From assembly GCF_000150275.1 (NCBI RefSeq), contig NW_002060948.1, positions 3,547,183 through 3,611,182 on the forward strand: a stretch of 64,000 nt of DNA, in the 5' to 3' direction. A program made the position numbers and the translations under genes. Each line of letters begins with the position of its first letter. The first letter of the stretch is position 1. This document shows positions 3 through 63,705 of this stretch, in pieces. The notes beneath the pieces are model-generated. The model made no database searches, was not told the DNA's origin, and worked only from the letters and a program-made list of their open reading frames with translations. The DNA comes from Trichoplax adhaerens. Lineage: Eukaryota; Animalia; Placozoa.

Positions 3-2159
3 TCATCGCGACGTTCATGCAGATCAATAGACACAATATTGTCCTGCTCTAATGACGATCAGGATACAAAGGCATTTCCTGGTCTATGTCATTGCGATTC
101 AGAATGTATTCTATATGGAGATTGCTGTATGAATTATAAAAATCCTTGTCCAGAGACTAATGTAAGTCTTGTGACTACGACAAATCGGTCTTGCAAAAAA
201 GTTCAGATGACAAATTGGATAAAGCAACGATTGCCAGCTAGACAGAATAAAACGTTGGTTAGTTTATATAACTATCGTTGTCTAAAAGGCTCTTTGGTCG
301 TTACAAAATGCCCTTCGCATTGGAGCGATAGTTACTATCGCAATAAATGTGAGAATATATCAGATACATTCAACTTTTATAGTCATGTACCTGTTGTCCA
401 TAATACAACCAATATCGCCTATAGAAACATTTACTGTGCTCTTTGCCATCGAGTTAATGTAACAAATTTACAAGATATCCGCTTTTGGAGCATTGCTATA
501 AAATGTAATTTATCGGAAAATGCTATTGAGTTTTGGAGTTTACAGAGTGATGGTCTATGGAAATATTGCTCATTGATATCGTTGATTAATTATAATGATA
601 CGACATCGGCTCCGCGTAGAAAGTGTCGTCTAGAAATGGGTAATGAAATGATCTCTACATGTTTATCTGATCCAAAATCTCTGAAGATGAATCAAAGTTT
701 TTTTCAAGCAATTCGAGACGGCTGCCAAAGCTATATCGCACCAATCGTTTCTGGCGGACAATTATACCACAATCCGTTTTGTTTAATGTGTAGTACAACA
801 GCTATCCATCTTAATGTTAGTTGTCTGATTAGATCACCGCTTCCACCTCAAATGGGTACTCTTGCATTCGGGGAAGGCTTCATAACAGATCTGGCAAATC
901 CCGTGTACTATGACCTACATTATAATCCACTCACGAGCACGATTACTTATCGAAAGTTTAGAGGCAATATGAAAGACAGTTTTACGCTTACAATATTGCT
1001 CTTTTGTGAAGTAGGAATGTTGTATAATCCTTGGACAAACCAATGCCAAAATGTGTTCCCAAAACCTATCGCTATATTATTGCATCAAGAGAATAAGACT
1101 GATCCATACAAAAATTCAACCAATAATAATAGTAGTAATTTTGAAAACACTATGCAAAATCGAACTTGTCATCTTACCTATGGAAATGCAAATACTACTG
1201 CTTATTTCAACGCTACTCATGTTGTTTTTCTACCTACCAATAAGACTTTCTTAGCTGCAAGATTACCAAATCACAATAACCATTTTTCCTTTTATAACTG
1301 TACTACCAATAGCAGTAGTGCGTTAGTCAATCAGACGTTAAGTACTGTTGTCTTATCCTCAGCTTTATATTATTCACCTGCTGTAATGTCTATCGTTGCA
1401 TTTATGTTGCAAATTTATTTTCATTTTCACAAGAGGTTAATTTGCCGATGGTGTATAGCATGTTGGTCACTTACAGTTATGTTGTTAGAGATTTCTATCA
1501 TCATTAATCAATCGATACAGTCAACTCCATCTGCAATATCCTCGATCGATTGCGATATACTATTAGCCGTCCATCACTTTCTTGAACTTTCCACATGTCT
1601 TTGGACTGTTGCGATAAGTAAGGATGTCTATTACCGCAGTCGCCATGATGATTTTTTACATCATTCATCCTTTCCTTGCAATATATTTTGCTTCTCCCTT
1701 ATGGCTTGGCTATTGCCTGGTGCAGCGGTTGGATGTTTCATAACTATCAATAAATATAGTTTAGGACTAACGTATGGTAACCATACTCATTGCCATCTCC
1801 AAGACGCTACCATTCTGGTATGGTATTCTTGCGTACCCTATTGCATCCTTGCAAGTGTCTGCCTTTTAATCTATATCGCGGCATTGCTATCAAGAGTGCA
1901 ACATCATCGTCAAAGCAATAAGAATGATCGTCGCCTCAATGATGATTCTACGTGTGGGTACACGACCGATCAAGATCAATTCAGTGAATATCAAAAAATT
2001 TTATTCTTGATGCTTATGTCCACGGTTGTTAACTCCAATCTCATTGTACGCAGTATTGCAACTATGGCCACAACTACCCTATCGTATATGCAATATATCA
2101 GCATTAGTGTTCATTTTCTTCAGGGATTGATTGTCGGTTGTGTTTCATTTGTTGTATGA
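3..2159 (+). CDS. Somatomedin-B domain, cysteine-rich ectodomain class B/adhesion-like 7TM receptor (5' truncated by the window)
   Basis: Frame is open from base 3. SMB motif CHCDSECILYGDCC, two Y-x-N-x-[FY]-C-x-x-C repeats and many N-glycosylation sequons. Seven hydrophobic segments carry class-B hallmarks (TM3 C..LAVHHFLELSTCLW...KDVY, TM4 AWLLP, TM7 FLQGLIV). Confidence 0.8.
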   Translation, partial: SSRRSCRSIDTILSCSNDDQDTKAFPGLCHCDSECILYGDCCMNYKNPCPETNVSLVTTTNRSCKKVQMTNWIKQRLPARQNKTLVSLYNYRCLKGSLVVTKCPSHWSDSYYRNKCENISDTFNFYSHVPVVHNTTNIAYRNIYCALCHRVNVTNLQDIRFWSIAIKCNLSENAIEFWSLQSDGLWKYCSLISLINYNDTTSAPRRKCRLEMGNEMISTCLSDPKSLKMNQSFFQAIRDGCQSYIAPIVSGGQLYHNPFCLMCSTTAIHLNVSCLIRSPLPPQMGTLAFGEGFITDLANPVYYDLHYNPLTSTITYRKFRGNMKDSFTLTILLFCEVGMLYNPWTNQCQNVFPKPIAILLHQENKTDPYKNSTNNNSSNFENTMQNRTCHLTYGNANTTAYFNATHVVFLPTNKTFLAARLPNHNNHFSFYNCTTNSSSALVNQTLSTVVLSSALYYSPAVMSIVAFMLQIYFHFHKRLICRWCIACWSLTVMLLEISIIINQSIQSTPSAISSIDCDILLAVHHFLELSTCLWTVAISKDVYYRSRHDDFLHHSSFPCNIFCFSLMAWLLPGAAVGCFITINKYSLGLTYGNHTHCHLQDATILVWYSCVPYCILASVCLLIYIAALLSRVQHHRQSNKNDRRLNDDSTCGYTTDQDQFSEYQKILFLMLMSTVVNSNLIVRSIATMATTTLSYMQYISISVHFLQGLIVGCVSFVV

Positions 2160-7389: not shown

Positions 7390-10300
7390 TCTAGTCTATC
7401 GTAGTCGACTAGCCTAAATGTCTTGTTAATCAGTAAGGCATATTGGCAACGGCAGCTGCTAGACTACTATATTTTACTAAAATGACAACTTCCTTTGAAA
7501 ATAATAATAATATTAATTAATAGACATCCACAAATTGTATGGTCACTTGGTCAGGACTAAGCCTTTTTAGCCATCTCTTTCTGCCAAATACAACAGATTA
7601 CTCCACCTAGAATAACATTCTTTTACGTAGATATCATTTTCACCCACAAAAGTACATCAATTTTAATCATAAAAAAGATTATCATAAGAATTCCTTGGTA
7701 TACTGTAGTCTAGGGTATTTTCACATATTCCAACGGAATAGATAGACTGTCTTACAATCCTTGAAATTTTATTTTAGCAAATGAATAAAAATTACCTACC
7801 TTGTTAATCGTTGTCGGTAAAGCAAGACATTTAATCAGTAACAGTACTGACAATTCAATCTATGATTAAAATTCCGACATTAAATGATCAAATGAAATCA
7901 GAATAAAAATATATATTCCTGTATTATTCTACTTAAGCAAGCATGTGTATCCAATTAATAAAGAAGAATAACTGGTAGTCTCATTCTTAGGCTATCCAAT
8001 TAAACAATTATTAATTATTGGCGTAACTAGTTATCACCTTACTAAATTTAAATATAACCAGCTTGATTCAGTTTTTTCGAAAAAATTGCCATCAGGGTAC
8101 CTATGAAATTAATATCATAGACTATCAGCATCTTCTGTATGCTGGATATTATTAAATAGGGTGTAGAATTTCGTATAGGTAATATACTCCATTATGACAA
8201 TGTTATAATATAATCCATTCTAAATATTAAATTCATATTATCAATTGGGACTGTCTTAAATTTATCGATCGAAATAAATTGTCACCAATGATGTGGCACC
8301 GCTCAAGATTGAATGGCCTCAACGGATACAGTACTATCTTGTCTAAGAAAATTAATTAAGATTCCATTAGACGTGTCTATATTTAATGATTGCATTTTCA
8401 TCCTGGTGTCTACTCTAAAACAAAAGTTAAAATAGTCCTGAAAATGTCCCACACGTCGAATACGGATGAAATCATGACTTTAACTCAACATATCTCAAGC
8501 AAAGCTTTCATAATTTTGATGGTAACTATGCATCAATTGAAAGATAGAATAATATCACCTTATCATTACTGTATCGTTATTCCATATTATGTATATGGAG
8601 AATTAATTGAACGGTGGGTCTTGCATTCTTTAAAGAATAAAAATTAAATACGCAAATTACCATTATGGACTTTGATATTGTCAAGGGATACCGACGTCAT
8701 TAGGATGTTATGGTATTATCAATAACTTAAATTTCCTTCTATAATTTGTAATTTAATTTTTCAATTAATATCAATAAAATAGTTGACACTCTTTCATGTT
8801 AAGAATACTTTATTTATTATTGAGGACATTTTTTTATATCATTGCTGGCTGGTTAGAGAGGGAACTATCACGAACTAGCGGTTACGCAAATGGTCGGCAG
8901 ATTGAGCATAATTCAAAGAATAAAAATACAATTAGATTATTTCTTATCGTAAATTGACTCCATTTCTCTATCGCGGAGATAGAAAGCATTTTAAACATTA
9001 ACCAATTGGCATAGGTATCGATCTCTTTGCAAATAATGCAAACTATCATCAGTGATACTCAATTTTAGTTTATACTCGTATACTAATAGATAGTTATAAA
9101 TCATACGTGGATTAAAATGCATACAATCTTCATCTATCACCATCATTAATTCATACGATAAAAATATAGCGTCAGAAAAGCAATATAATAGTAATTTTAA
9201 TTCAATTTTATCATGATTGATGATATCGTTATCCTATATGATAGGAGAAATGAAAAAGACTGTACGTTGATTTATAGGCTATAAAAAAATTGTCATGGTT
9301 AATTATCGTCAGTAGATTAAATATCCAACTTTAATTGTTATATCATCATTGTATAGTTGTCTTAAGACAAGGACAAGTAGGAATGCAATATGACGTCAAA
9401 TATCAAGTGACAAAAGTAAAAGAACGATAAATGGTCAATTTTAGTATGAAGGTTGAGTTTGATTTAAAATTTGGGGGGATATCTCAATATCATGCCTATC
9501 GATATGGACCTAAACCTCTATTCAAGCATAGCTAGTTATTCTACGAGTATGGATAGGTCTACTTTTAGTGTAATTACTATCATGAAGATGAAAACTGATA
9601 AGTAACGAAAACAATTAATCATCATCTTGACAATTTTAAAACTATAGTATTGGAATTGACATCATTCAACCGGATGTCTTGGCCGAAGGTAACCGGAATT
9701 ATTGGGTATTGATTCGATTAAATAGATTTGCTTTTCAATCTGTCATTGATTTGATTAATTTAAACAAAATAAAAAAAAAATGATTGCTATATCAATATTA
9801 GCTCTGGGTAATAACAAAAGCATAGAAGAATAAAAGTGGATTCCTTTCTCAAAACATTCAATTTAAATTACTAGGTAAATCCTATTCATTATTCAAACCC
9901 ATTTATTTCTCACCTTTTCAATTGGCCATCCATTATGAGTAAAATAGATGATTTGTCTTGTATCATCACAAGTTTAAATTATGCTACAAAAAAAATGGAA
10001 AAACCATTGCCGATGATCACGTATACCATTTATTTTATTTATTTTTATTATTTCAATGCAGCGAATTAAAAGGCAAAATGCATGTGAAGAAAAAACTCAG
10101 CACAACATTTTCTGGTACTTACCAGAGAAAACTTAATTATGACTGATCGCATGGCAGACGGTGTGAAATATCGTCGGTTTCGTAGACTATACTAAAATCA
10201 ATGTTGTTATAATAAATGACGAGAATACCTAATGTTAGGGTATTTTATTTCTTACAAGTTTAAAAATTCTAATGCGAAAAAAATAATATGAATTTTTTTA

Positions 10301-12299: not shown

Positions 12300-14261
12300 A
12301 TGTCTCAAGCTGTAACTTTAGCACATTTCGATAAATTCTTAGATACCACACCAATCAATCGTTCATACTATGATGATTGGGTATCTTGCTGCTATCAACT
12401 TCAATTACTCTTGAAGCAAACGAGCTTGAAAACTATTCCACTCATTTCGGTATATCAACGCTTAACTAACCTGATCGAAAAATGGCCTAACCTTTGGCCA
12501 GCAACTCCAACACCACCATCTTGGGATAATTTTCACATGGCCATTGGTAGTACTGACTTTAAATCTTGCCATCATCAGCTACAAGCAATACTAGCTGAAA
12601 TTACCAATCATATCAATGTATTAGATCATGAAAAAGATCATGTCAAGAAGAATAATAGAGACAATCACCATCATCATCATTTACTACTTTTGACATCATT
12701 AACTACTTCGATATCACAATTACTTCAATGTACCGATCTTACATCATCGATTCCATCTTATATTAATAGCAGTAATGTAAGTGTTAATTTACGCGCTATA
12801 CTAGAGGTAATGTTCTCAATTGTAGCTAATTCAACACCTAACCGTCATTTACCCAATCAAAAAATTGCAGAACAAATAAAAACTTGTATTACTAATCGAT
12901 CACATTTTCAACTGCAAAGTAAAGTGGATGATCGGCATGATCAAGCAACAACAGCTGAAAATTCATCATCAACAACATTAAAAGACGAGACTGAGACTGA
13001 TGATGGTGACAATAGTGGACGTATTGGTAAGAAAATATCCTTTAGTATCAACAGTATCATCAATTCAAATTGCATTGAACAACAGAAGCAATACGATTTA
13101 CGTTGCCAAGATCAGCCTCAATTACTATCGCTTCATCCATCTTCAAACTCATCACCATCCCTATCTATGGCATCATCAACTTCATCATCTTCTTTACGCC
13201 AATCGCATTTGGTAGCATTATCGGTTCCTGCGAATAATCAAAATCAAATTATCAGCTACCATTATCCAAACAAATTACCTCATGACCCTCACCCATCGCC
13301 CCATCATCGCCATTCTAATTGTTTGCCATCATCATCACCACCTTCAGCTTTACATCATGCACCTAATTCTGACTTATATTCAGCACGATTACATCCATTA
13401 GGTCAAGTAATAACAACAGCAGTAAGTACAACAGTGTCTACAACTCCAGCAGCGACGATAGCAGCAACACCTACTGGTGGAGTTGCCAATTACTTCCAAG
13501 ATGAATTTTGGAATGCTTCAAAACATACCACTAACAATATGGACATGACATTATCACCTCCATCAACAGCACCATTAATCGGTCGACACGGTATCCATCC
13601 AAGTTTCTTTAGTTCAACATTTCAATCTAATGGACAAGATATGATGACTGCAGTGTTTGATAACAACAAAATCTACCGTTGCCATCAATGCTTGCGTTTA
13701 TGTAGTAGTCCAGCTGAATTAAAACGCCATACTAAATCCCATCATCAAACTAATGAACGATTACGTTTTTGTTGTTCTCATTGTAACAAACGCTTTGCGC
13801 AATCATCGCATTTACAGCAACATTTACGCGTTCATACTGGCGTACGACCATTTAAATGTCGTTTTTGCTCCAAATCTTTCGCACAGTCGACCCATCTACA
13901 ACAACACATTAAAATGCATACAGGCGATAAACCATTTCGCTGCAATTTTTGCGAGAAGCATTTCTCTCAGTTATCCCATTTACAAAAGCATACCCGAGTT
14001 CATACAGGTGAAAAGCCGTATAAATGTATTTATTGCTTTAAAAGTTTCTCTCAATCATCCAATCTGCAGAAGCATTTACGCGTCCACACAGGTATAAAAC
14101 CATACAAGTGCACTTACTGCTCTAAGAGTTTTACCCAATCACCTAATTTGCAAAAGCATATCCGAATTCATACCGGAGAACGTCCCTATACATGCCATTT
14201 ATGCTCGAAATCATTTAGTCAGTCATCATCTTTACAGCAACATTTAAAGCTACACGACTGA
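12300..14261 (+). CDS. Single-exon C2H2 zinc-finger transcription factor (7 fingers, ZNF384/ZNF362/rotund-like recognition helices) with an eh1 motif
   Basis: 653-aa ORF. Six tandem fingers with HTG(V/D/E/I)(R/K)P(F/Y) linkers plus one divergent finger. Helices read QSSHLQQH, QLSHLQKH, QSSNLQKH. FSINSII at 13041-13061. Confidence 0.9.
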   Translation: MSQAVTLAHFDKFLDTTPINRSYYDDWVSCCYQLQLLLKQTSLKTIPLISVYQRLTNLIEKWPNLWPATPTPPSWDNFHMAIGSTDFKSCHHQLQAILAEITNHINVLDHEKDHVKKNNRDNHHHHHLLLLTSLTTSISQLLQCTDLTSSIPSYINSSNVSVNLRAILEVMFSIVANSTPNRHLPNQKIAEQIKTCITNRSHFQLQSKVDDRHDQATTAENSSSTTLKDETETDDGDNSGRIGKKISFSINSIINSNCIEQQKQYDLRCQDQPQLLSLHPSSNSSPSLSMASSTSSSSLRQSHLVALSVPANNQNQIISYHYPNKLPHDPHPSPHHRHSNCLPSSSPPSALHHAPNSDLYSARLHPLGQVITTAVSTTVSTTPAATIAATPTGGVANYFQDEFWNASKHTTNNMDMTLSPPSTAPLIGRHGIHPSFFSSTFQSNGQDMMTAVFDNNKIYRCHQCLRLCSSPAELKRHTKSHHQTNERLRFCCSHCNKRFAQSSHLQQHLRVHTGVRPFKCRFCSKSFAQSTHLQQHIKMHTGDKPFRCNFCEKHFSQLSHLQKHTRVHTGEKPYKCIYCFKSFSQSSNLQKHLRVHTGIKPYKCTYCSKSFTQSPNLQKHIRIHTGERPYTCHLCSKSFSQSSSLQQHLKLHD

Positions 14262-38052: not shown

Positions 38053-40851
38053 TTAACTTGAAAGCGTAAATAAGTAGGTAAACATTGCCAGGGTAAAGAC
38101 CAAGTAATGATATGGTACGATATTTCGAGTACCACCAAAGACGCTAGAATCAAAGCTGTAGCAGCCCAGAGTTGATGTGCGAAATTTTAACGCCGTACAA
38201 AACTCAGTCCCATTGTGGTAAAGAGAGGAAAATAACGTACCGTTGTAAATTGCCGTACGGCAATGATTGAAAATGGTGTTACAAAATGAACTACAAATTA
38301 TAAATCGACCAGCGCTTCGATTGTACCAATTTCCCTGATTGGGACTACAGAAATAACAGCGTAAGTATTCCATACGTTGCTGGCAAGGAGCAGAAGCAGA
38401 AGTTAACCTTGGCATATTATTAAATACGGAAGTGACTTCAGTACGGCGACAACATGTTTTGCTAAACCAGGTGCAATGACTAAGGCCCGCATGAGTCTCC
38501 GGCTTTCTCGCATTACCTTGGAAAGTTATAAAGTGTACCAATGATGGTATGTTAGAGTTATTAAAATTAGTATACTAGTACAGTAGGTAAAATGGAACCA
38601 CAATTTAGATCAATATTCGGTAAGCTATCATTTGTATAACCACACATCAAGTGCCGTCACTATTGAATACATTGCGTTCATTTTGACAAGTCTTTATTAT
38701 TGCCTAATTTCTTATACTGTACTAGTCCATTCCTTGCTCGTTATACTTTGCGTGTTCACTGTACTAACTATACATATCTCTTTCACTTTATATCATTACT
38801 GATTCATTAAGCAAGGATATCGCAGCATACGTGAGATTGCTATTAATCACATGCTCCTTTCGTATACACTTTATCAAGTTGTCATCACTATCTCTGCCAA
38901 TGTACTCGTACATTATGACAGACACTACACCACAACACAGACAGCTACATTACTGAGAACGAATTGGATAAGATAGTGTAATAGTTGAAGTATCAGCAGC
39001 GATGGGGTAAACGAAATATTGTGAGTAGTTTTGATACTTTAGGATAGTCTCGTGTGCATGGTGTAGGAGAAAGAAGTCAAATCAATCAATACTATGCCTA
39101 TTTTATTTCTCGTATAGCTCTCTAGTATCAACTAAGTTACACGTAATTCCGTAATTGTAAATTTATACGGTAAGCGAAATAGATCGCAGTGATTAATCAT
39201 TGTACACAAGAGACCCTGTAACATTTTTTAGCAACGATTTCAGAGCCTTTGCCAGTCTCTCTTTTGTACAGCGTCGCTATTGTATATTACTAGTAATGTT
39301 AAAGCGATGGGTAGGCTCTTTTACAAGAAAGTAACTTTACCCAATGCTAGCTAGTATAGACGTTGAAAAAGATATAGGTGTACACTGTCTAGTCAGGGAT
39401 TTTCTTACAAGTCCATGGTAAATGTTGTGCGGTAGTTGAGAAATTAATTCAGTAGGACGAGTAGCACGCTACGTCGTCAGATTGAAAACCGCAGTGTACA
39501 ACATTGGTCAAAGCCACTGTTGTTGGCATAAAGAAGAAGGACATTTTGGATGATTATCTATCATTATATAATAAATGATGGTTCTCTATCACTTCATGTA
39601 ACTACTGTACTATGGTCATTGATGTTCAGCCTTGTTTGTCTATTTTGCAATGGCGGTTGATCTTGCTCGTATGTAAAGACAAAAGTGATCAGAGATAATA
39701 CTACTATATTTCAAGCTTCCTCAGCGTTGATTGAGTTATTTTAATGCCAGCCTGTCCTTGTTTGCATTCTTTTTATATAACTAGACTACTTTTGACCCCG
39801 TATCAAGTAAACAAGACGTTGCAATGGATAGTCAAAAGTATAGGAGAAATACTTGCAGAAGCAGCGTACAGTAGACTGCAAACTCGAATAAGGGCCTTAA
39901 GGCAGATACATGGTATGCATTATTCACTACTCTAGCCATGATGCACTGATGTGCTGTACTTTGTGAACTCCATAGGCAAGATTTTGATGATCGCCTTGAA
40001 TAGTACGTTATCAAGTTCAATTGAACTGATGGCTAAGAGGGAAATGTGAAATGATGGCTAGTAATCACAACAGTGACGGCTGACTGAGTACCAAATATGA
40101 AAAGCTATTGGATCAAGCATTATCATAGTAGCATACTACAGCAACGAATGGATTGGTTGACGAGTTGTTTAGCAATCAAGAATGAAATGGGCGACTAACA
40201 ACAGTATGTCGATTTGAGTTGATTTCCGTAAGTAGGATTGGTCCCTGTCCGCAGGGACTCCTTTTTCCCTTTTGGTAGTCGCTGCTATCTGTTGTATGTT
40301 AAGTTTAAGGATAGAGTAAGATTGGAGTGTCGATTAAGCTGGAAGTGATAGCCCTTGTTGGTAGTTGTTGGCTCTACGTGTACACAACACTATCCATCAC
40401 CCCTATTCGATTCTATGACTGGCGATATGGCAGCCATGAAAGTTAACATGATTCGTTGCTATTCACGATGATGATGATGATAATAACAACAATAATATAC
40501 GGTAGACGAGCGTATGATTAATTGAAGTAGCAAGTATTCATCTACCCCACTGCCTTTCGTCATCGATCCATCAGTCTAATAGCAATGGTTATCCGACTAT
40601 ACAAGCCATCATCCACCTGGATACCATGTTGCAAAAGCGAAATTAACAATCACATTAACATTTATCAAGCCGTGAAATAGCGCCATTGGGCATTTTCGAT
40701 GGCTTTTTCTCCCTACTCTCCACTTGTATATGTATAGGTGGACAATTGTTGTTCATACTATTGACTTTATCTTACCGAAATAAGGACATTCTTGACCATG
40801 AACCATCCAAGCTGTACAAAGGATGCAAATAACTAAAGCTTTGAATCGCAT
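38053..40851 (-). CDS. Folate receptor / riboflavin-binding-protein family secreted, probably GPI-anchored protein; exons 40851-40776 and 38516-38053
   Basis: Exon 1 MRFKALVICILCTAWMVHGQECPYF (signal peptide) splices in phase 1 to GNARKPE...CTWFSKTCC...CQQRMEYLRCYFCSPNQ...ICSSFCNTIFNHC...GTEFC. Hydrophobic C-terminus. Confidence 0.8.
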
Positions 40852-57228: not shown

Positions 57229-58590
57229 TTATTGACAGTGGATCCATTTCTGAATAAAATAAGTATAGCGTTGATTCAAGAATCCGTGCTTTAAAGGGAT
57301 TGGCTTACTGCAACAATGTGGTTGCAGACTCCACTTGCAATACGTTGAAATGGTTGTACAGTATACGAGTCGATCATGGGATGCTAGTCCTTCAAGCAGT
57401 TGTGTTGCCGACGGACTGTGTGACTCAGGGTTATTTGATTTTCTCTTACTGGTTTCAATCGTGGAGAGTAATGTACTTGTTGACACTGCTTCATCAATAT
57501 CAGATATATCTTCTTGAGCAATGTTAAGCATGCGATTCAGATCTGTCAAGGCTAAAATAGAGACGCTACAGTAGTAAGTGCAAGTCCCTGAGATATCCTA
57601 TAGATCAGAGATTTGAACTACCACTACCGTTGGTCTATGTTTTTGAAGCATGCGATTGAGATCAGTCAAAGCTAAAATAGAGATGCTACAGTAGTAAGTG
57701 CAAGTCCCTGAGGTGTCCTATAGATCAGATCATCAGAGACTTGAACTACAACTACCGATGGTCTATGTTTTTAAAGCATGCGATTGAGATCAGTCCAGGC
57801 TAAAATAGAGACGCTACAGTAGTAAGTGCAAGTCCCTGAGGTATCTTATAGATCAGATCATCAGAGACTTGAACTACAACTACCGTTGGTCTATGTTTTT
57901 AAAGCATGCGGTTGAGATCAGTCAAGGCTAAAATAGAGACGCTACAGTAGTAAGTGCAAGTCCCTGAGATATCCTATAGATCAGAGACTTGAACTACCAC
58001 TACCGTTGGTCTATGTTTTTAAAGCATGCCGTTGAGATCTGTCAAGGCTAAAATAGAGACGCTAGAGTAGTAAGTGCAAATCCCAGAGGTATCCTATACT
58101 GTATAGATCAGATCATCAGAGACTTGAACTACAACTACCGTTGGTCTATGTTTTTGAAGCATGCGGTTGAGATCGGTCAAGCCTAAAATAGAGACGCTAC
58201 AGTAGTAAGTGCAAGTCCCTGAGATATCCTATAGATCAAGAGACTTGAACTACAACTACCGTTGGTCTACAGTATGTTTTTAAAGCATGCGGTTGAGATC
58301 AGTCAAGCCTAAAATAGAGATACTACCGTAGTAATGACGAATGATCATAAGACAAGCACAAGCAGAAATGGGCGAGTGTGTTCGTTTTTTACATGGCGAC
58401 TAGGAGCATTAGCATGCTGGCTATCCGACCATGATTTACTTCTCAAAGAGACATATTGACTCCCCATTTGTATTCTCCACTGCCAAAGAGGGAGAGACAT
58501 GGCGTTGTCTCCTCGTGTGTACTCGTTGGTGTATATCCATGTAAGGACTTTTCTAATGTTATGATTTGGCAACAATTTCGCTCTCTCCAT
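57229..58590 (-). CDS. Possible orphan two-exon gene (58590-58440 + 57551-57229) whose intron holds the tandem array
   Basis: Two short ORFs can be joined in phase 1 (A|GTAAAT ... TTTTAG|CC). It is divergent from the promoter-like island at 58620-58860. No recognisable homology. Confidence 0.3.
57526..58333. repeat. Tandem array, 120/128-bp unit, 6 full copies plus a partial one
   Basis: AAGCATGC starts at 57526, 57646, 57774, 57902, 58022, 58157 and 58283. Length variants differ by an 8-bp insertion near GATCA. Confidence 0.95.
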
Positions 58591-59352: not shown

Positions 59353-61420
59353 ATGGATTTGATACAACATGCCTTTGAAACACGACTTAGCACTTCTGCT
59401 ACAACAGACATCCAAAAGATACTCCAACTCAACAGTGGATCGGACTATCAGGACACGGAAAGTATGTTTGCATTGATTGGTGATAAATTGATGGAACTGA
59501 CATTATCTGCAATGGTATATGATTACGGATCCAAATTATCCTACATCTGATCAAAGTTCTATAGTCAATGCTTTGGCCAGTGATCGAATCGTATTTCAAC
59601 AACTATTCGATGCGATCGGTTCAACAACAATCATCCACCAGTTCAATCCTAATTGGGATGGTCAAGGGCTTACCAATTCAATATTAAACCGAAAGTTAAA
59701 GGCCTTTGTGGGTGTCTTAGTCATGCATGGCAGCTGGGATACTCTTGCACGTTGTATTAAAAAGCACTTGCTCAATTATGTTACCACATACATTGATGGT
59801 CGTGTTGATAGCAGCAAATCCAGGAATGCATCAGCAAAAGAAAATGAAAGTAATTTTCATATCCACAAAAGATTCATACAAAATCCCATCACGCACCATT
59901 TCGATACTGAAGGAGGGAAACATAGCCAAGAATTGAAAGATCCTCTTGTAACGACGACGACGACGGATACCGCTGACGAAAGCCTACCATCATCCTTTGA
60001 AGCTGCACGCAAAATGCAACTTTTACAAAATGAAATGATGCAAAAATCTCAAGAGCGAGAATACCAATCACCTAAACGTGATAACTTGAGCAGTCCAGGT
60101 GAGCTTGACTATGTATTAATCTGTCCATCGACATCAATAATCGCAACACATTTAGCCAAGGGTACAGTACATCGGTGACGTAGATTGTGTTCAGTAGATC
60201 TAGCCAAAGAGAAAGCATCTAACTAGGATATATGTATATTTATATTGATACTTCTAGGCAATGTATCTTTCAATAATCCACGTAGCGCAGTAACACCAAA
60301 AGAACAACGCGTATTTTCCGCTATTAGTGGATCAACTTGTACCCTACTACAATTTAAACAGTACGTCGCCCACCTGCCAGACATCAATGCTAGGAATAGC
60401 GGTAAAGTAGGTGATACACCGTTAATGTTACTCCTTCGAAAGACTCACTTACGAAGTGACGACGAAATACCGAAAATTGAAGTCCTTTTAAGACTTGGTG
60501 CTTCTTGGACTGCAACAAACAATCAGGGTGCATCTGCAAATATAATCGCTCGCAAACATGATAGTGCTGTCATCGATAGATTAAGGAAGATTCAACCTGT
60601 TGATATAGATGAAAGAGTGCCATTAAGCGAACCGCTGGAAAATTACTCTGTATCACCAGAGATGCAAAAGGTATTTTCAGCAGTGAGTGGAGATACTTAT
60701 TCGCTACCTCAGTTTGAAGAAGCTGTGAATAATGTACCAAACATTAACTGTAGAAATTCTGGTAAAAAAGGTGATACAGCACTCATGATGTTATTACGAA
60801 AAGACGTACTAAAATTAGAAACAGATATTCCGAAAATTAAAATTTTACTAAGCTATGATGCTTCTTGGACAGCCACCAACAATAGAGGTGAGACTGCAAT
60901 GCAGCTTGCTACAAAGCATCCATCAAACGTTCTAGATATGATTAAATTCCCGGCAAATTCAGCTAATTCCACATCAAGTAATCCAGAACAAGTAAGCACT
61001 CCAGTATCCGAAAGAGAACCAGGTCAATCGCGTGGTGTATCAAGTCAAAAATCTGAAACTCCAAATTATTCCACTAACGCAAGTATTAATTACAGTCCAC
61101 CACTTAGGCATGTTGGCCTTAGGGAACGGAAAGTAATCGATGCGATCAAGAATAGAAACTCCTCCATAGGCGAATTACGACGGGTAATATCTAGAGTTGA
61201 AAATTTGAATTTTTGTGATAATAGCGAAGTTGGAGACCCTCCTTTGATGTTGCTTTTGCGTCAAAAAGATTTAAATCTGTCGACCGATGTATCAAAATTT
61301 GAACTTCTCAGAAATTTTGGTGCTTCATTGGATTACCGAAATAATCGTAACCAATCCGCTAGGGATTTGATTTCTTCACTTGATAAAAACTTTTTCCTTA
61401 AAATCCAAAAATTTTGTTAA
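59353..61420 (+). CDS. Degenerate RNase III-like domain + three ankyrin-like modules (~635 aa if corrected); 1-nt frameshift near 59527; intron 60099-60257
   Basis: DLIQHAF...ESMFALIGDKLMELTLSAMVY / DPNYPTSDQSSIVNALASD...SILNRKLKAFVGVLVMHG..DTL.RCI..LL follows the RNase III pattern. Exon 2 has three ~100-aa repeats with ankyrin-like motifs (e.g. DINARNSGKVGDTPLM and LLRLGASWTATNNQG). Confidence 0.7.
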
Positions 61421-62879: not shown

Positions 62880-63705
62880 AAGTAAGAATCACCGACCATG
62901 AAAAATATATCAATTTCGATTATTATATTAATTTCTTCAATATAGTAATTAGAGATTACCCATAAGTTAAATGTATTTTAGCTAATATTCAACAGATACT
63001 ATTAAATCATCGCCGTATATCATAATCGTATTTGTCATACAATGTTCAATACGTAAAACATCAGCAAATCCATGAAAAATATTTCAATTTCGATTGTTAG
63101 CATGTAAAAATTGCAGATTACCAGTTAAATTTAAGTATTATGACTAGTATTTAATAAGATACAGCTGTATTAAAATTATTACTGTATATCATAATCGTAT
63201 TTGTCACAAAAAGCTCAGTAGTAGGAATCAATGATTATGAAAAATATTTTGATTTCGATTATTCGATTATTCTTAATGAGTAGTAATTACAGGTTACCCA
63301 TTCAGTTAAACATTATGGCGAGTATTCAACAAGATACTATTAAAAATTGAAATCGTTGCCGACATCATAATCGCATTTATCGCAAAAAAAGCTGAATAAT
63401 TAAGAATTAACGAACATGAAAAATATTTCAATTTCGATCGTTAATGTGTGGTAATAAGAGATGACTGGTTAAATTAAAATATTATGGCTAGTTATCAATA
63501 AGATCTATTAAAATTAAAATCGTTGCCAATATCATAATCGTATTTATCGCAAAAAAGCTGAATAATTATAAATCAATGACCGTGAAAAATATTTCAACCT
63601 CGATTGTTAAATGTGTAGTAATTAGAAATGGCTCGTTAAGTTAAGACATTATAGTTAGTAATCAATAAGATACTAGTACAATCATTACAGTATATCATAA
63701 CTATC
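62880..63705. repeat. Degenerate AT-rich tandem array, ~165-180-bp unit, ~5 copies
   Basis: YRTGAAAAATAT...TTTCGAT at about 62897, 63071, 63236, 63415 and 63581. ATCATAATCGYATTT recurs. Confidence 0.85.

What the first reader, a model, noticed from the sequence alone, without database searches (positions are those of the whole stretch)
59353..61420. Orphan pseudo-RNase III fused to three ankyrin-like modules: candidate non-cleaving RNase III-fold adaptor
Seen: the N-terminal ~130 aa follow the RNase III helical pattern by eye. SMFALIGDK aligns with the signature ERLEFLGDS, and SILNRKLKAFVG with E. coli SILADTVEALIG. Three of the four acidic catalytic positions are lost: E41->A, D114->R, E117->K; only D45 remains. 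Two of these are charge reversals. A low-complexity linker and a phase-compatible intron lead to three ~100-aa ankyrin-like modules. Known: inactive RNase III domains act as RNA-binding or dimerisation modules (MRPL44, trypanosome KREPB4/5, chloroplast RNC1). Ankyrin repeats serve sensing roles in RNA immunity (RNase L). I do not know this architecture from Dicer, Drosha or MRPL44. Inference: a lineage-specific protein that binds dsRNA without cutting it, or heterodimerises with Dicer/Drosha-type domains, and recruits partners via the ANK modules.
Basis: partly seen in the sequence, partly recalled or inferred. Interest (0 to 1): 0.82.

Follow-up and report, generated by a model that had tools for sequence, protein, structure and literature searches.

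The report
Dead RNase III domain plus ankyrin modules
This Trichoplax gene encodes a strongly diverged, probably non-cutting RNase III-type domain joined to three small ankyrin-repeat units, one of a small gene family known only from placozoans, and in this reference assembly one extra base breaks its reading frame.

Summary
Window 59353-61420 (+) is Trichoplax adhaerens gene TRIADDRAFT_57515.

**Frame break.** The intact form is the 635-aa Trichoplax sp. H2 protein TrispH2_008843. Against it, the window carries one extra base at 59545, which splits off codons 1-64.

**RNase III fold.** The window's own pieces match nothing on their own. The fold shows only through orthologues:
- Two other placozoan first exons, 44-45% identical, have RNase III families as their best Pfam hits, E about 1e-5 and below the curated cut-offs.
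- An AlphaFold model gives RNase III-fold chains as the top 30 rows of a structure search, Z 11.8-6.9.

**Catalytic site.** Ala, Arg and Lys replace three of the four catalytic acids. They are invariant in the three orthologues.

**Ankyrin modules.** Three 98-aa modules are real.

**Not an orphan.** This module type occurs only here and in two genes 38-60 kb downstream. The scan had already noted that family on neighbouring DNA (s1-778772, s1-778778).

The function, a non-cleaving dimerising or RNA-binding scaffold, is inferred and was not tested here.

The parts
59353..59544 (+). Codons 1-64 (frame +1): N-terminal helices of the RNase III-like domain, including the degenerate signature motif
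   Evidence: tblastn of P0005 residues 1-64, 62 of 64 identical. The MDLIQ start is shared by P0005, P0006 and P0007. The six-frame hit of profile A1 has E 3.2e-27.
59458..59484 (+). ESMFALIGD: remnant of the RNase III signature. Gly-Asp is kept, and the catalytic Glu position is Ala.
   Evidence: Aligned to ERLEFLGD of C. jejuni RNase III. E36, S37, M38, A40, G43 and D44 are invariant in 3 of 3 orthologues. Codon positions were read.
59545..59545 (+). One extra base relative to the Trichoplax sp. H2 protein. It shifts the frame from +1 to +2, and frame +1 stops at 59548-59550.
   Evidence: The two tblastn segments end at 59544 and start at 59546. The orthologues P0005, P0006 and P0007 are continuous here. 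There is a single copy in the assembly.
59546..59803 (+). Rest of the RNase III-like domain (residues 65-150 of the H2 protein)
   Evidence: Model pLDDT is about 78-89 over residues 31-150, dipping to 66-72 at 91-110. The six-frame hit of profile A1 has E 8.5e-63.
59678..59713 (+). SILNRKLKAFVG: second catalytic motif, with Arg (59690-59692) and Lys (59699-59701) in place of the catalytic Asp and Glu
   Evidence: Aligned to ILSDALEAIIG of C. jejuni RNase III. R113, K114, K116, A117 and G120 are invariant in 3 of 3 orthologues.
59804..60098 (+). Low-complexity, poorly conserved linker (first part); end of exon 1
   Evidence: pLDDT is below 50 from residue 155. The orthologue ORFs P0006 and P0007 run into the intron after the same SPG.
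60099..60257 (+). Intron, GT..AG, 159 nt, phase 1
   Evidence: Sequence. Spliced out in both deposited models P0001 and P0005. It appears as a 53-aa gap in tblastn.
60296..60589 (+). Ankyrin-like module 1 (98 aa)
   Evidence: Alignment A3. The six-frame profile hit has E 2.0e-48. PDB hits are ankyrin and DARPin chains only.
60653..60946 (+). Ankyrin-like module 2 (98 aa)
   Evidence: 55% identical to module 1. The Pfam Ank_2 best stretch lies here, residues 164-234 of ORF3, at 29 bits. Also found.
61118..61417 (+). Ankyrin-like module 3 (100 aa), followed by the stop at 61418-61420
   Evidence: 29% identical to module 1. The six-frame profile hit has E 1.7e-46.

Best explanation
The locus is Trichoplax adhaerens gene TRIADDRAFT_57515. 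Its intact form is seen in Trichoplax sp. H2 (635 aa). It has an N-terminal domain of about 150 aa with the RNase III fold, a disordered linker of about 100 aa, and three 98-aa mini-domains of 2-3 ankyrin repeats each.

**Shown.**
- The RNase III fold of the N-terminal domain.
- Replacement of three of the four metal-binding acids by Ala, Arg and Lys.
- Conservation of these residues across placozoan orthologues that are only 42-45% identical.
- Membership of a placozoan-only cluster of RNase III/ankyrin-module genes on the same scaffold.

**Inferred.**
- Without the acids the domain cannot hold the two Mg2+ ions, so it does not cut RNA by the RNase III mechanism.
- RNase III domains work as dimers. 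This one most likely serves as a dimerisation and RNA-groove-binding scaffold, either with itself or with a paralogue.
- The conserved Arg and Lys may contact RNA phosphates in the former active site.
- The ankyrin modules probably bind protein partners.

In this reference assembly one extra base (59545) cuts the first 64 codons, which carry the signature helix, from the rest. Here the gene is either mis-sequenced or N-terminally broken.
For: **Identity.** P0001 is 100% identical to the ankyrin exon. Its 90% cluster holds the H2 protein P0005.

**Orthologues.** An exhaustive phmmer search of 1.84 billion representatives with P0005 residues 1-188 gave 5 proteins at E<=0.001:
- P0001.
- Two placozoan-like first exons, P0006 and P0007 (E about 4e-32, 44-45% identity).
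- Two repeat proteins judged spurious.

**RNase III.**
- The best Pfam hits are PF14622 for P0006 (E 1.7e-5, 25.4 bits) and PF00636 for P0007 (E 4.7e-5, 24.6 bits).
- Profile A1 against 177,635 PDB sequences gave 3 hits at E<=10. The top two are RNase III (E 0.022 and 0.044), over 90 residues in the catalytic register.
- hhalign of A1 against the paralogue profile A2 gave E 7e-4 in the same register.
- The AlphaFold model built with A1 has pLDDT 69 and pTM 0.62.
- In Foldseek, the listed rows (ranks 1-49) are RNase III, Dicer, Drosha, mL44, editosome and related chains by their descriptions, best E 2.2e-3.
- VIA-align against 48,161 chains put RNase III-fold entries in rows 1-30 (Z 11.8-6.9). 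The next row has Z 5.2.
- In the ESM Atlas, 24 of 30 feature hits are RNase III clusters.

**Conservation.** A40, G43, D44, R113, K114 and K116 are invariant in 3 of 3 orthologues.

**Family.**
- The module profile A3 gave 14 six-frame matches in the genome: 3 here, 7 in the 1441-aa paralogue, 3 in the minus-strand gene of L014, and 1 on the small contig C1107.
- The 1441-aa paralogue carries Pfam Ribonuclease_3 and Ank.
- BLASTP of P0005 against that paralogue gave E 1e-27 over the modules.
Against: - The window's own pieces give no RNase III signal.
- Every Pfam RNase III score of the orthologues is below the curated cut-off.
- hhalign probability against the paralogues is only 26%.
- The structure model rests on three sequences. 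The single-sequence model was poor, pLDDT 43.
- No dimer was modelled, and no RNA binding, expression or transcript was examined.
- The frameshift is present in the only copy in the assembly.
- All 5 amino-acid differences between the window and the H2 protein fall in the first 146 residues, with none in the other 489. This fits relaxed constraint on this domain in at least one lineage.
Confidence: 0.6

Rival explanations
1. In the T. adhaerens reference strain the gene is decaying. The frameshift is real and the RNase III-like domain is no longer made whole. At most a 580-aa protein starting at the internal Met (59519) survives, with a truncated domain plus the ankyrin modules. This bears on the H1 allele only and is compatible with a working gene in other placozoans.
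For: - There is one extra base at 59545 in the only copy in the assembly.
- The JGI-derived model P0001 starts at 59519.
- All 5 of 5 H1/H2 amino-acid differences lie in the first 146 of 635 residues. A chance of about 6e-4 if spread evenly is my hand calculation on a split chosen after seeing the data.
- At three of these sites the window differs from a state shared by H2 and at least one outgroup. Two of them, V50 and N76, are invariant in the three orthologues.
Against: - A single-base error in a Sanger-era draft is equally possible, and no reads were seen.
- The rest of the ORF is intact and identical to H2 over 489 residues.
- The two genomes are 99.1% identical in nucleotides (passage of PMC6057997), so five differences are few.
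Confidence: 0.25
2. The domain is still a nuclease with altered chemistry or substrate, as the Mucor RNase III-like protein R3B2 cuts single-stranded RNA.
For: - R3B2's ribonuclease core (6zdw) is among the best structural matches: Foldseek rank 2, E 6.5e-3, and VIA Z 11.3.
- One catalytic Asp is kept and the former active-site motifs are the most conserved parts of the domain.
- For R3B2 I saw only the search listing and the start of the abstract of PMC8136814.
Against: Three of the four metal-binding acids are replaced. Two are replaced by basic residues, which should repel Mg2+. That these four acids are needed for catalysis is established knowledge, recalled and not tested here.
Confidence: 0.06
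3. The N-terminal part is an unrelated helical bundle, and the RNase III likeness is chance plus model bias.
For: - The window's pieces alone match nothing.
- All sequence scores are sub-threshold.
- The VIA tool's own note says helical models often reach middling Z by chance.
Against: - Several different methods name the same family in the same register: Pfam on two orthologues, a PDB profile search, hhalign against the paralogues, two structure searches on the one AlphaFold model, and the ESM Atlas.
- In the VIA search, 30 RNase III-fold rows come before the first other fold.
- The gene shares its special ankyrin module with neighbours that carry recognisable RNase III domains.
Confidence: 0.05

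Closest known systems
Neighbouring placozoan RNase III/ankyrin-module genes (TrispH2_004532 = the 1441-aa ORF at G000:C1409:3646567-3650892, and the genes at 3666641-3669993)
   Same: The same special ankyrin module of about 98 aa is found nowhere else in this genome. The domain order is the same: RNase III-type domain first, then spaced modules. They lie on the same scaffold within about 60 kb.
   Different: The 1441-aa paralogue has 7 modules. It keeps Glu, Asp and Glu at three catalytic positions, with Asn at the fourth, in its alignment to Drosophila Dicer-2. Its N-terminal domain is barely alignable to this gene's (BLASTP E 0.04; hhalign E 7e-4). For the minus-strand gene of L014, the RNase III likeness of its upstream exon is my reading by eye only, with no Pfam hit.
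Bacterial-type (class 1) RNase III nuclease domain, e.g. C. jejuni 3o2r, E. coli 7r97, A. aeolicus 1jfz
   Same: The fold matches (Z 11.1-11.8, 136-141 residues aligned). The register of both catalytic motifs matches.
   Different: Three of the four catalytic acids are lost. No dsRBD was found by Pfam. Ankyrin modules stand in its place. Sequence identity is 12-18%.
Non-catalytic RNase III partners of the trypanosome editosome (KREPB4-8)
   Same: These are RNase III-fold domains that have lost catalytic residues. [quoted passage not shown] An editosome chain (9dei_D) matches the model at Z 10.5.
   Different: They come from a different lineage, carry different accessory domains (no ankyrin modules) and act in mitochondrial RNA editing. 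No pairing was tested here.
Mitochondrial ribosomal protein mL44 (MRPL44)
   Same: It is an inactive RNase III-fold domain used as a structural module. Pfam RM44_endonuclase is the second hit of P0006 (E 0.0031), and the structural matches 3j7y_c and 6zm5_c appear.
   Different: The score is below the cut-off (18 against 27 bits). mL44 has no ankyrin modules.
RNase L (ankyrin repeats plus a nuclease)
   Same: Ankyrin repeats are combined with an RNA-directed domain.
   Different: In RNase L the ankyrin repeats are N-terminal and contiguous, and the nuclease is of the KEN/HEPN type, not RNase III (recalled). No homology was found in any call.

Membership tests
RNase III superfamily (Pfam PF00636 / PF14622) | Profile match at or above the Pfam gathering score | tested here: not met
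   Window pieces: no hit at E<=10. H2 protein P0005: no RNase III hit. Orthologue P0006: 25.4 bits against 35. Orthologue P0007: 24.6 bits against 27. Both are nevertheless the best-ranked families.
RNase III superfamily (Pfam PF00636 / PF14622) | All-helical RNase III endonuclease-domain fold | tested here: met
   Tested on a predicted model (pLDDT 69, three-sequence alignment). VIA rows 1-30 of 48,161 chains are RNase III-fold, Z 11.8-6.9. The Foldseek rows listed are RNase III-family by their descriptions. The ESM Atlas model has TM 0.66 to a bacterial RNase III cluster.
RNase III superfamily (Pfam PF00636 / PF14622) | Signature motif with catalytic Glu and Asp (ERLEFLGD type) | tested here: not met
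   The motif reads ESMFALIGD. Gly-Asp is kept and the Glu position is Ala, invariant in 3 of 3 orthologues.
RNase III superfamily (Pfam PF00636 / PF14622) | Second catalytic Asp and Glu on the later helix | tested here: not met
   Arg and Lys occupy these positions, invariant in 3 of 3 orthologues.
RNase III superfamily (Pfam PF00636 / PF14622) | Dimerisation of two RNase III domains | not testable with these tools
   Only monomer prediction was on offer. No dimer was modelled.
Ankyrin repeat (Pfam clan Ank) | Profile match at or above the gathering score, in repeated units | tested here: met
   Ank_2 scores 29.0 bits against 27.3 and Ank_4 24.8 against 22.7 on the window's ORF3. There are three internal modules. 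All 37 PDB hits at E<=1 are ankyrin or DARPin chains by name, with one oddly named as caspase-2.
Placozoan RNase III/ankyrin-module cluster (scan notes s1-778772, s1-778778) | The family-specific ankyrin module of about 98 aa | tested here: met
   14 six-frame matches of profile A3 fall in this gene, two neighbours and one small contig. BLASTP against the 1441-aa paralogue gives E 1e-27.
Placozoan RNase III/ankyrin-module cluster (scan notes s1-778772, s1-778778) | N-terminal domain homologous to the paralogues' RNase III domain | tested here: inconclusive
   hhalign of A1 against A2 gives E 7e-4 at probability 26%, in the correct register. BLASTP gives E 0.04 and 2.2.
Dicer / Drosha | Two RNase III domains in one chain, with helicase, PAZ or dsRBD | tested here: not met
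   There is one RNase III-like domain. Pfam finds only Ank families in P0005.

The most novel reading that the evidence does not exclude
Placozoans evolved their own RNA-directed system from a single RNase III/ankyrin gene. This member is catalytically dead, with a charge-reversed, phosphate-binding former active site. It pairs with the near-intact 1441-aa paralogue to make an asymmetric dimer that senses or nicks structured or foreign RNA. The spaced ankyrin modules pass the signal to partner proteins. That would be a sensor-adaptor arrangement not described in any other animal.
Probability: 0.1. Interest if true: 0.75.

Novelty: new variant of a known kind. Interest (0 to 1): 0.45.

Why it matters
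Inactive RNase III domains are known as scaffolds, in mL44 and in the editosome partner proteins. An RNase III-fold domain joined to spaced ankyrin modules turned up in none of my literature searches:
- 'Trichoplax' + 'RNase III' + 'ankyrin': 0 papers.
- The gene's locus tag: 0 papers.
- 'Trichoplax' + 'Dicer' + 'innate immunity' + 'ankyrin': 0 papers.
- 'RNase III domain' + 'ankyrin repeats' + 'catalytically inactive': 1 paper, on another subject by its title and abstract.

If the family forms active/inactive pairs, it would be an independent, animal-lineage case of the asymmetric RNase III design known from trypanosomes. I recall that Trichoplax has been reported to lack microRNAs, and the abstract of PMC3563456 says as much.

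More modestly, the result gives the uncharacterised proteins B3RZN2 and RDD39130.1 a fold. It also flags a likely error or lesion in the reference gene model, which omits the first 64 codons.

Tried and rejected
- **Short intron instead of a frameshift at 59515-59570.** A script listed 10 GT..AG pairs that keep the frame open. The best-looking pair, 59462-59564, would remove the signature motif. I rejected this because the H2 protein and both outgroup first exons read straight through, and tblastn places the break at one base.
- **Direct detection in the window's own pieces.** Pfam at E<=10, BLASTP against the paralogues, hhalign against A2 and a six-frame PF14622 scan of the genome all gave nothing.
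- **Word-indexed protein search with the 193-aa piece.** 46 candidates, none at E<=0.01. The length window excluded the 580- and 635-aa models.
- **phmmer of the whole P0005 against PDB.** Only one hit, a designed ankyrin protein at E 1.1.
- **Single-sequence AlphaFold.** pLDDT 43, unusable.
- **RNase III likeness of the upstream exon of the minus-strand gene in L014.** Seen by eye only. Pfam and hhalign gave nothing.
- **Relatives outside placozoans.**
  - The 386-aa ankyrin exon gave only one weak ankyrin protein of unknown origin, P0004, E 6.9e-5.
  - The exhaustive search with the N-terminal domain gave none.
  - The 1441-aa paralogue found only its H2 counterpart among the 8000 candidates scored.
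  - The Atlas search on the paralogue gave one sub-threshold viral RNase III cluster, 0.89, a lead only.
- **Whether the family is 'bacterial-type' or Dicer-derived.** The evidence is mixed and I did not settle it. A1 and L014's plus-strand ORF sit nearest to bacterial or plant RTL4 RNase III. The 1441-aa paralogue sits nearest to Drosophila Dicer-2 RNase IIIb.
- **dN/dS.** Not done, because no orthologue DNA could be fetched.
- **Supplements.** Supplementary files of papers were closed. Supplements of PMC6057997 (its per-gene data) and of the placozoan cell atlas PMC10580291 (per-gene expression) may bear on expression and selection of this gene, and I did not see them.
Full report
**What the window is.** The window is sparse in long ORFs and has 28-43% G+C. 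Its other ORFs carry metazoan domains: Somatomedin B, C2H2 zinc fingers and a folate receptor. The assembly has 105.6 Mb in 1414 contigs, and the window is G000:C1409:3547183-3611182. The ankyrin exon is 100% identical to NCBI protein XP_002113396.1, 'uncharacterized protein TRIADDRAFT_57515 [Trichoplax adhaerens]'. The contig is not human.

**Anatomy.** Three ORFs fill the finding's span:
- 59353-59550, frame +1, 65 aa
- 59519-60178, frame +2, 219 aa
- 60245-61420, frame +2, 391 aa

The last two are joined by a GT..AG intron at 60099-60257 (159 nt, phase 1). Both deposited gene models use it.

The JGI-derived model P0001 (580 aa) starts at the internal Met at 59519 and omits the first ORF. 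The 90% cluster of P0001 also holds TrispH2_008843 of Trichoplax sp. H2 (P0005, 635 aa), which starts MDLIQ... and reads through without a break.

tblastn of P0005 on the window places residues 1-64 on 59353-59544 and residues 65-635 on 59546-61417. So one base, 59545, is extra in this assembly. Only one copy of the region exists in the assembly. I could not see reads, so error and real lesion remain open.

The H2 models come from an 'evidence-based gene prediction', and the two genomes are 99.1% identical at nucleotide level (passages of PMC6057997).

**Is the N-terminal part an RNase III domain?** Taken alone, the window's pieces say nothing:
- Pfam gave no hit at E<=10.
- BLASTP against the paralogues gave E 0.04 to 2.2.
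- hhalign against the paralogue profile gave E 0.58 and 0.24.
- A six-frame PF14622 scan of the genome found 14 places, none here.
- The whole H2 protein also has no RNase III hit in Pfam.

The signal appears once orthologues are used. An exhaustive phmmer search of 1.84 billion representatives with residues 1-188 of P0005 gave 5 proteins at E<=0.001:
- P0001.
- Two unnamed ORFs of 251 and 270 aa (P0006 and P0007, 44-45% identical). They start MDLIQ, read through the frameshift site and run into the intron after the same SPG.
- Two repeat proteins that I set aside as spurious.

Several lines then agree:
- For P0006 the best Pfam family is Ribonucleas_3_3 (E 1.7e-5, 25.4 bits, cut-off 35). For P0007 it is Ribonuclease_3 (E 4.7e-5, 24.6 bits, cut-off 27).
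- A profile of the three orthologues (A1) searched against 177,635 PDB sequences returns 3 hits at E<=10. The top two are C. jejuni RNase III (E 0.022 and 0.044), aligned over 90 residues.
- hhalign of A1 against the two recognisable paralogue domains (A2) gives E 7e-4 at probability 26%, in the same register.
- AlphaFold2 with A1 gives pLDDT 69 and pTM 0.62, with blocks from residue 31 to 150 at 66-89. The single-sequence run gave 43.
- In Foldseek against the PDB, the listed rows are RNase III, R3B2, mL44, Rnt1p, Dicer, Drosha and editosome chains by their descriptions. The best is 3o2r_B at E 2.2e-3 and TM 0.67 by target. No row reaches E<=0.001.
- VIA-align against 48,161 representative chains puts RNase III-fold entries in rows 1-30 (Z 11.8 to 6.9, up to 141 residues aligned). 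The first other fold has Z 5.2.
- In the ESM Atlas, 24 of 30 nearest clusters by features are RNase III clusters (score 0.91). The Atlas's own model has TM 0.66 to a bacterial RNase III cluster.

No single sequence score is strong. Still, sequence, profile and structure methods name one family in one register. I take the fold as established at the level of prediction.

**The catalytic site.** In the alignment to C. jejuni RNase III, 's-m-l-a-l-i-G-d' lies on 'E-R-L-E-F-L-G-D' and 'i-l-s-r-k-l-k-a' lies on 'I-L-S-D-A-L-E-A'. The window therefore has:
- Ala (in ESMFALIGD, 59458-59484) at the second Glu of the signature
- the retained Asp
- Arg (59690-59692) at the Asp of the second motif
- Lys (59699-59701) at the Glu of the second motif

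That these four acids are the metal ligands (E. coli E41, D45, D114, E117) is recalled knowledge.

A40, G43, D44, R113, K114, K116, A117 and G120 are invariant in the three orthologues, which share only 42-44% identity overall. The invariant columns cluster on the former active-site motifs. The site has been remodelled and then held, which speaks for a retained function of the cleft. I infer RNA-phosphate contact; this is not shown.

**The ankyrin part.** Three modules lie at 60296-60589, 60653-60946 and 61118-61417. Modules 2 and 3 align to module 1 with 55% and 29% identity. Pfam Ank_2 (29.0 bits) and Ank_4 (24.8 bits) pass their cut-offs on the window's ORF. PDB sequence hits are ankyrin and DARPin chains, and the alignment shows a 6-residue insertion in the repeat. 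Orthologous ankyrin exons (P0002 at 54% and P0003 at 50% identity) exist on short unnamed contigs.

**Not an orphan.** A profile of the three modules finds 14 places in the genome:
- 3 in this gene
- 7 in a 1441-aa ORF 38 kb downstream (G000:C1409:3646567-3650892)
- 3 in a minus-strand ORF at 3668221-3669993
- 1 on the 7-kb contig C1107, with the same E-value as one of the latter and probably a second copy of that region

The 1441-aa ORF is 100% identical over 98% of its length to TrispH2_004532, with precomputed Pfam Ribonuclease_3 and Ank. It scores Ribonuclease_3 at E 2.2e-5. Its best PDB relatives are Drosophila Dicer-2 chains, and the alignment shows Glu, Asp and Glu kept, with Asn at the fourth catalytic position.

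A 213-aa ORF next to the minus-strand gene passes the Ribonucleas_3_3 cut-off (42.5 bits) and has lost the catalytic residues in its alignment.

The scan's earlier notes s1-778778 and s1-778772 describe this neighbouring family. The present gene is a further, more diverged member lying outside their span.

**How it probably works.**
- Shown: the fold, the loss of three acids, their conserved replacements, the architecture and the family.
- Inferred: no Mg2+-dependent cleavage. [quoted passage not shown] The ankyrin modules bind proteins.
- No dsRBD is present.

I put about 0.85 on the structural reading and about 0.45 on the mechanism, giving 0.6 overall.

**Against, and open.**
- All 5 amino-acid differences between the window and the H2 protein lie in the first 146 residues, with none in the remaining 489.
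- At three of those sites the window departs from a state shared by H2 and at least one outgroup. Two of them, V50 and N76, are invariant in the three orthologues.
- Together with the frameshift, this allows that the N-terminal domain is decaying in the reference strain. The numbers are small and the split was chosen after seeing the data.
- Transcripts, dimers and RNA binding were not examined.

**Novelty.** Pseudo-RNase III scaffolds are known. The fusion to spaced ankyrin modules, and a placozoan-only cluster of such genes, appeared in none of my literature searches. The databases name the proteins only 'uncharacterized protein', 'predicted protein' or 'hypothetical protein'. I class it as a new variant of a known kind, of moderate interest. 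The scan had already found the family on adjacent DNA.

Noticed in passing
window 57526-58334: A tandem array of 128-bp units, 6.4 copies at 86% matches, lies 1 kb upstream of the gene's start. Rows with periods of 120, 248 and 376 bp describe the same array.
   Followed up: no
window 63308-63675: A tandem repeat of 167-bp units, 2.2 copies, lies downstream of the gene.
   Followed up: no
window 12300-14261 (+), 39-2159 (+), 38053-38541 (-): Other long ORFs in the window are a C2H2 zinc-finger protein (zf-H2C2_2, E 6.7e-44), an ORF with a Somatomedin B domain, and a folate-receptor-like ORF.
   Followed up: partly
L015 (G000:C1107:1-7268), match at 663-866 (-): A 7-kb contig, mostly a run of N, carries one ankyrin module with the same E-value as the module at C1409:3669076-3669279. 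It is probably an unplaced second copy or haplotype of that gene.
   Followed up: no
L014 4642-5283 (+) and 6222-7994 (-): A 213-aa ORF with an RNase III-like domain that has lost the catalytic residues lies tail to tail with an ankyrin-module gene. That gene's 590-aa ORF begins with what looks by eye like the end of an RNase III domain. Its upstream exon (9380-9655, -) looks RNase III-like by eye but has no Pfam hit.
   Followed up: partly
G000:C1414 around 6.32, 6.97, 7.05 and 7.08 Mb: Several strong RNase III-domain matches lie in long open frames on another scaffold, two per locus at some places. They are presumably the Dicer genes of Trichoplax.
   Followed up: no
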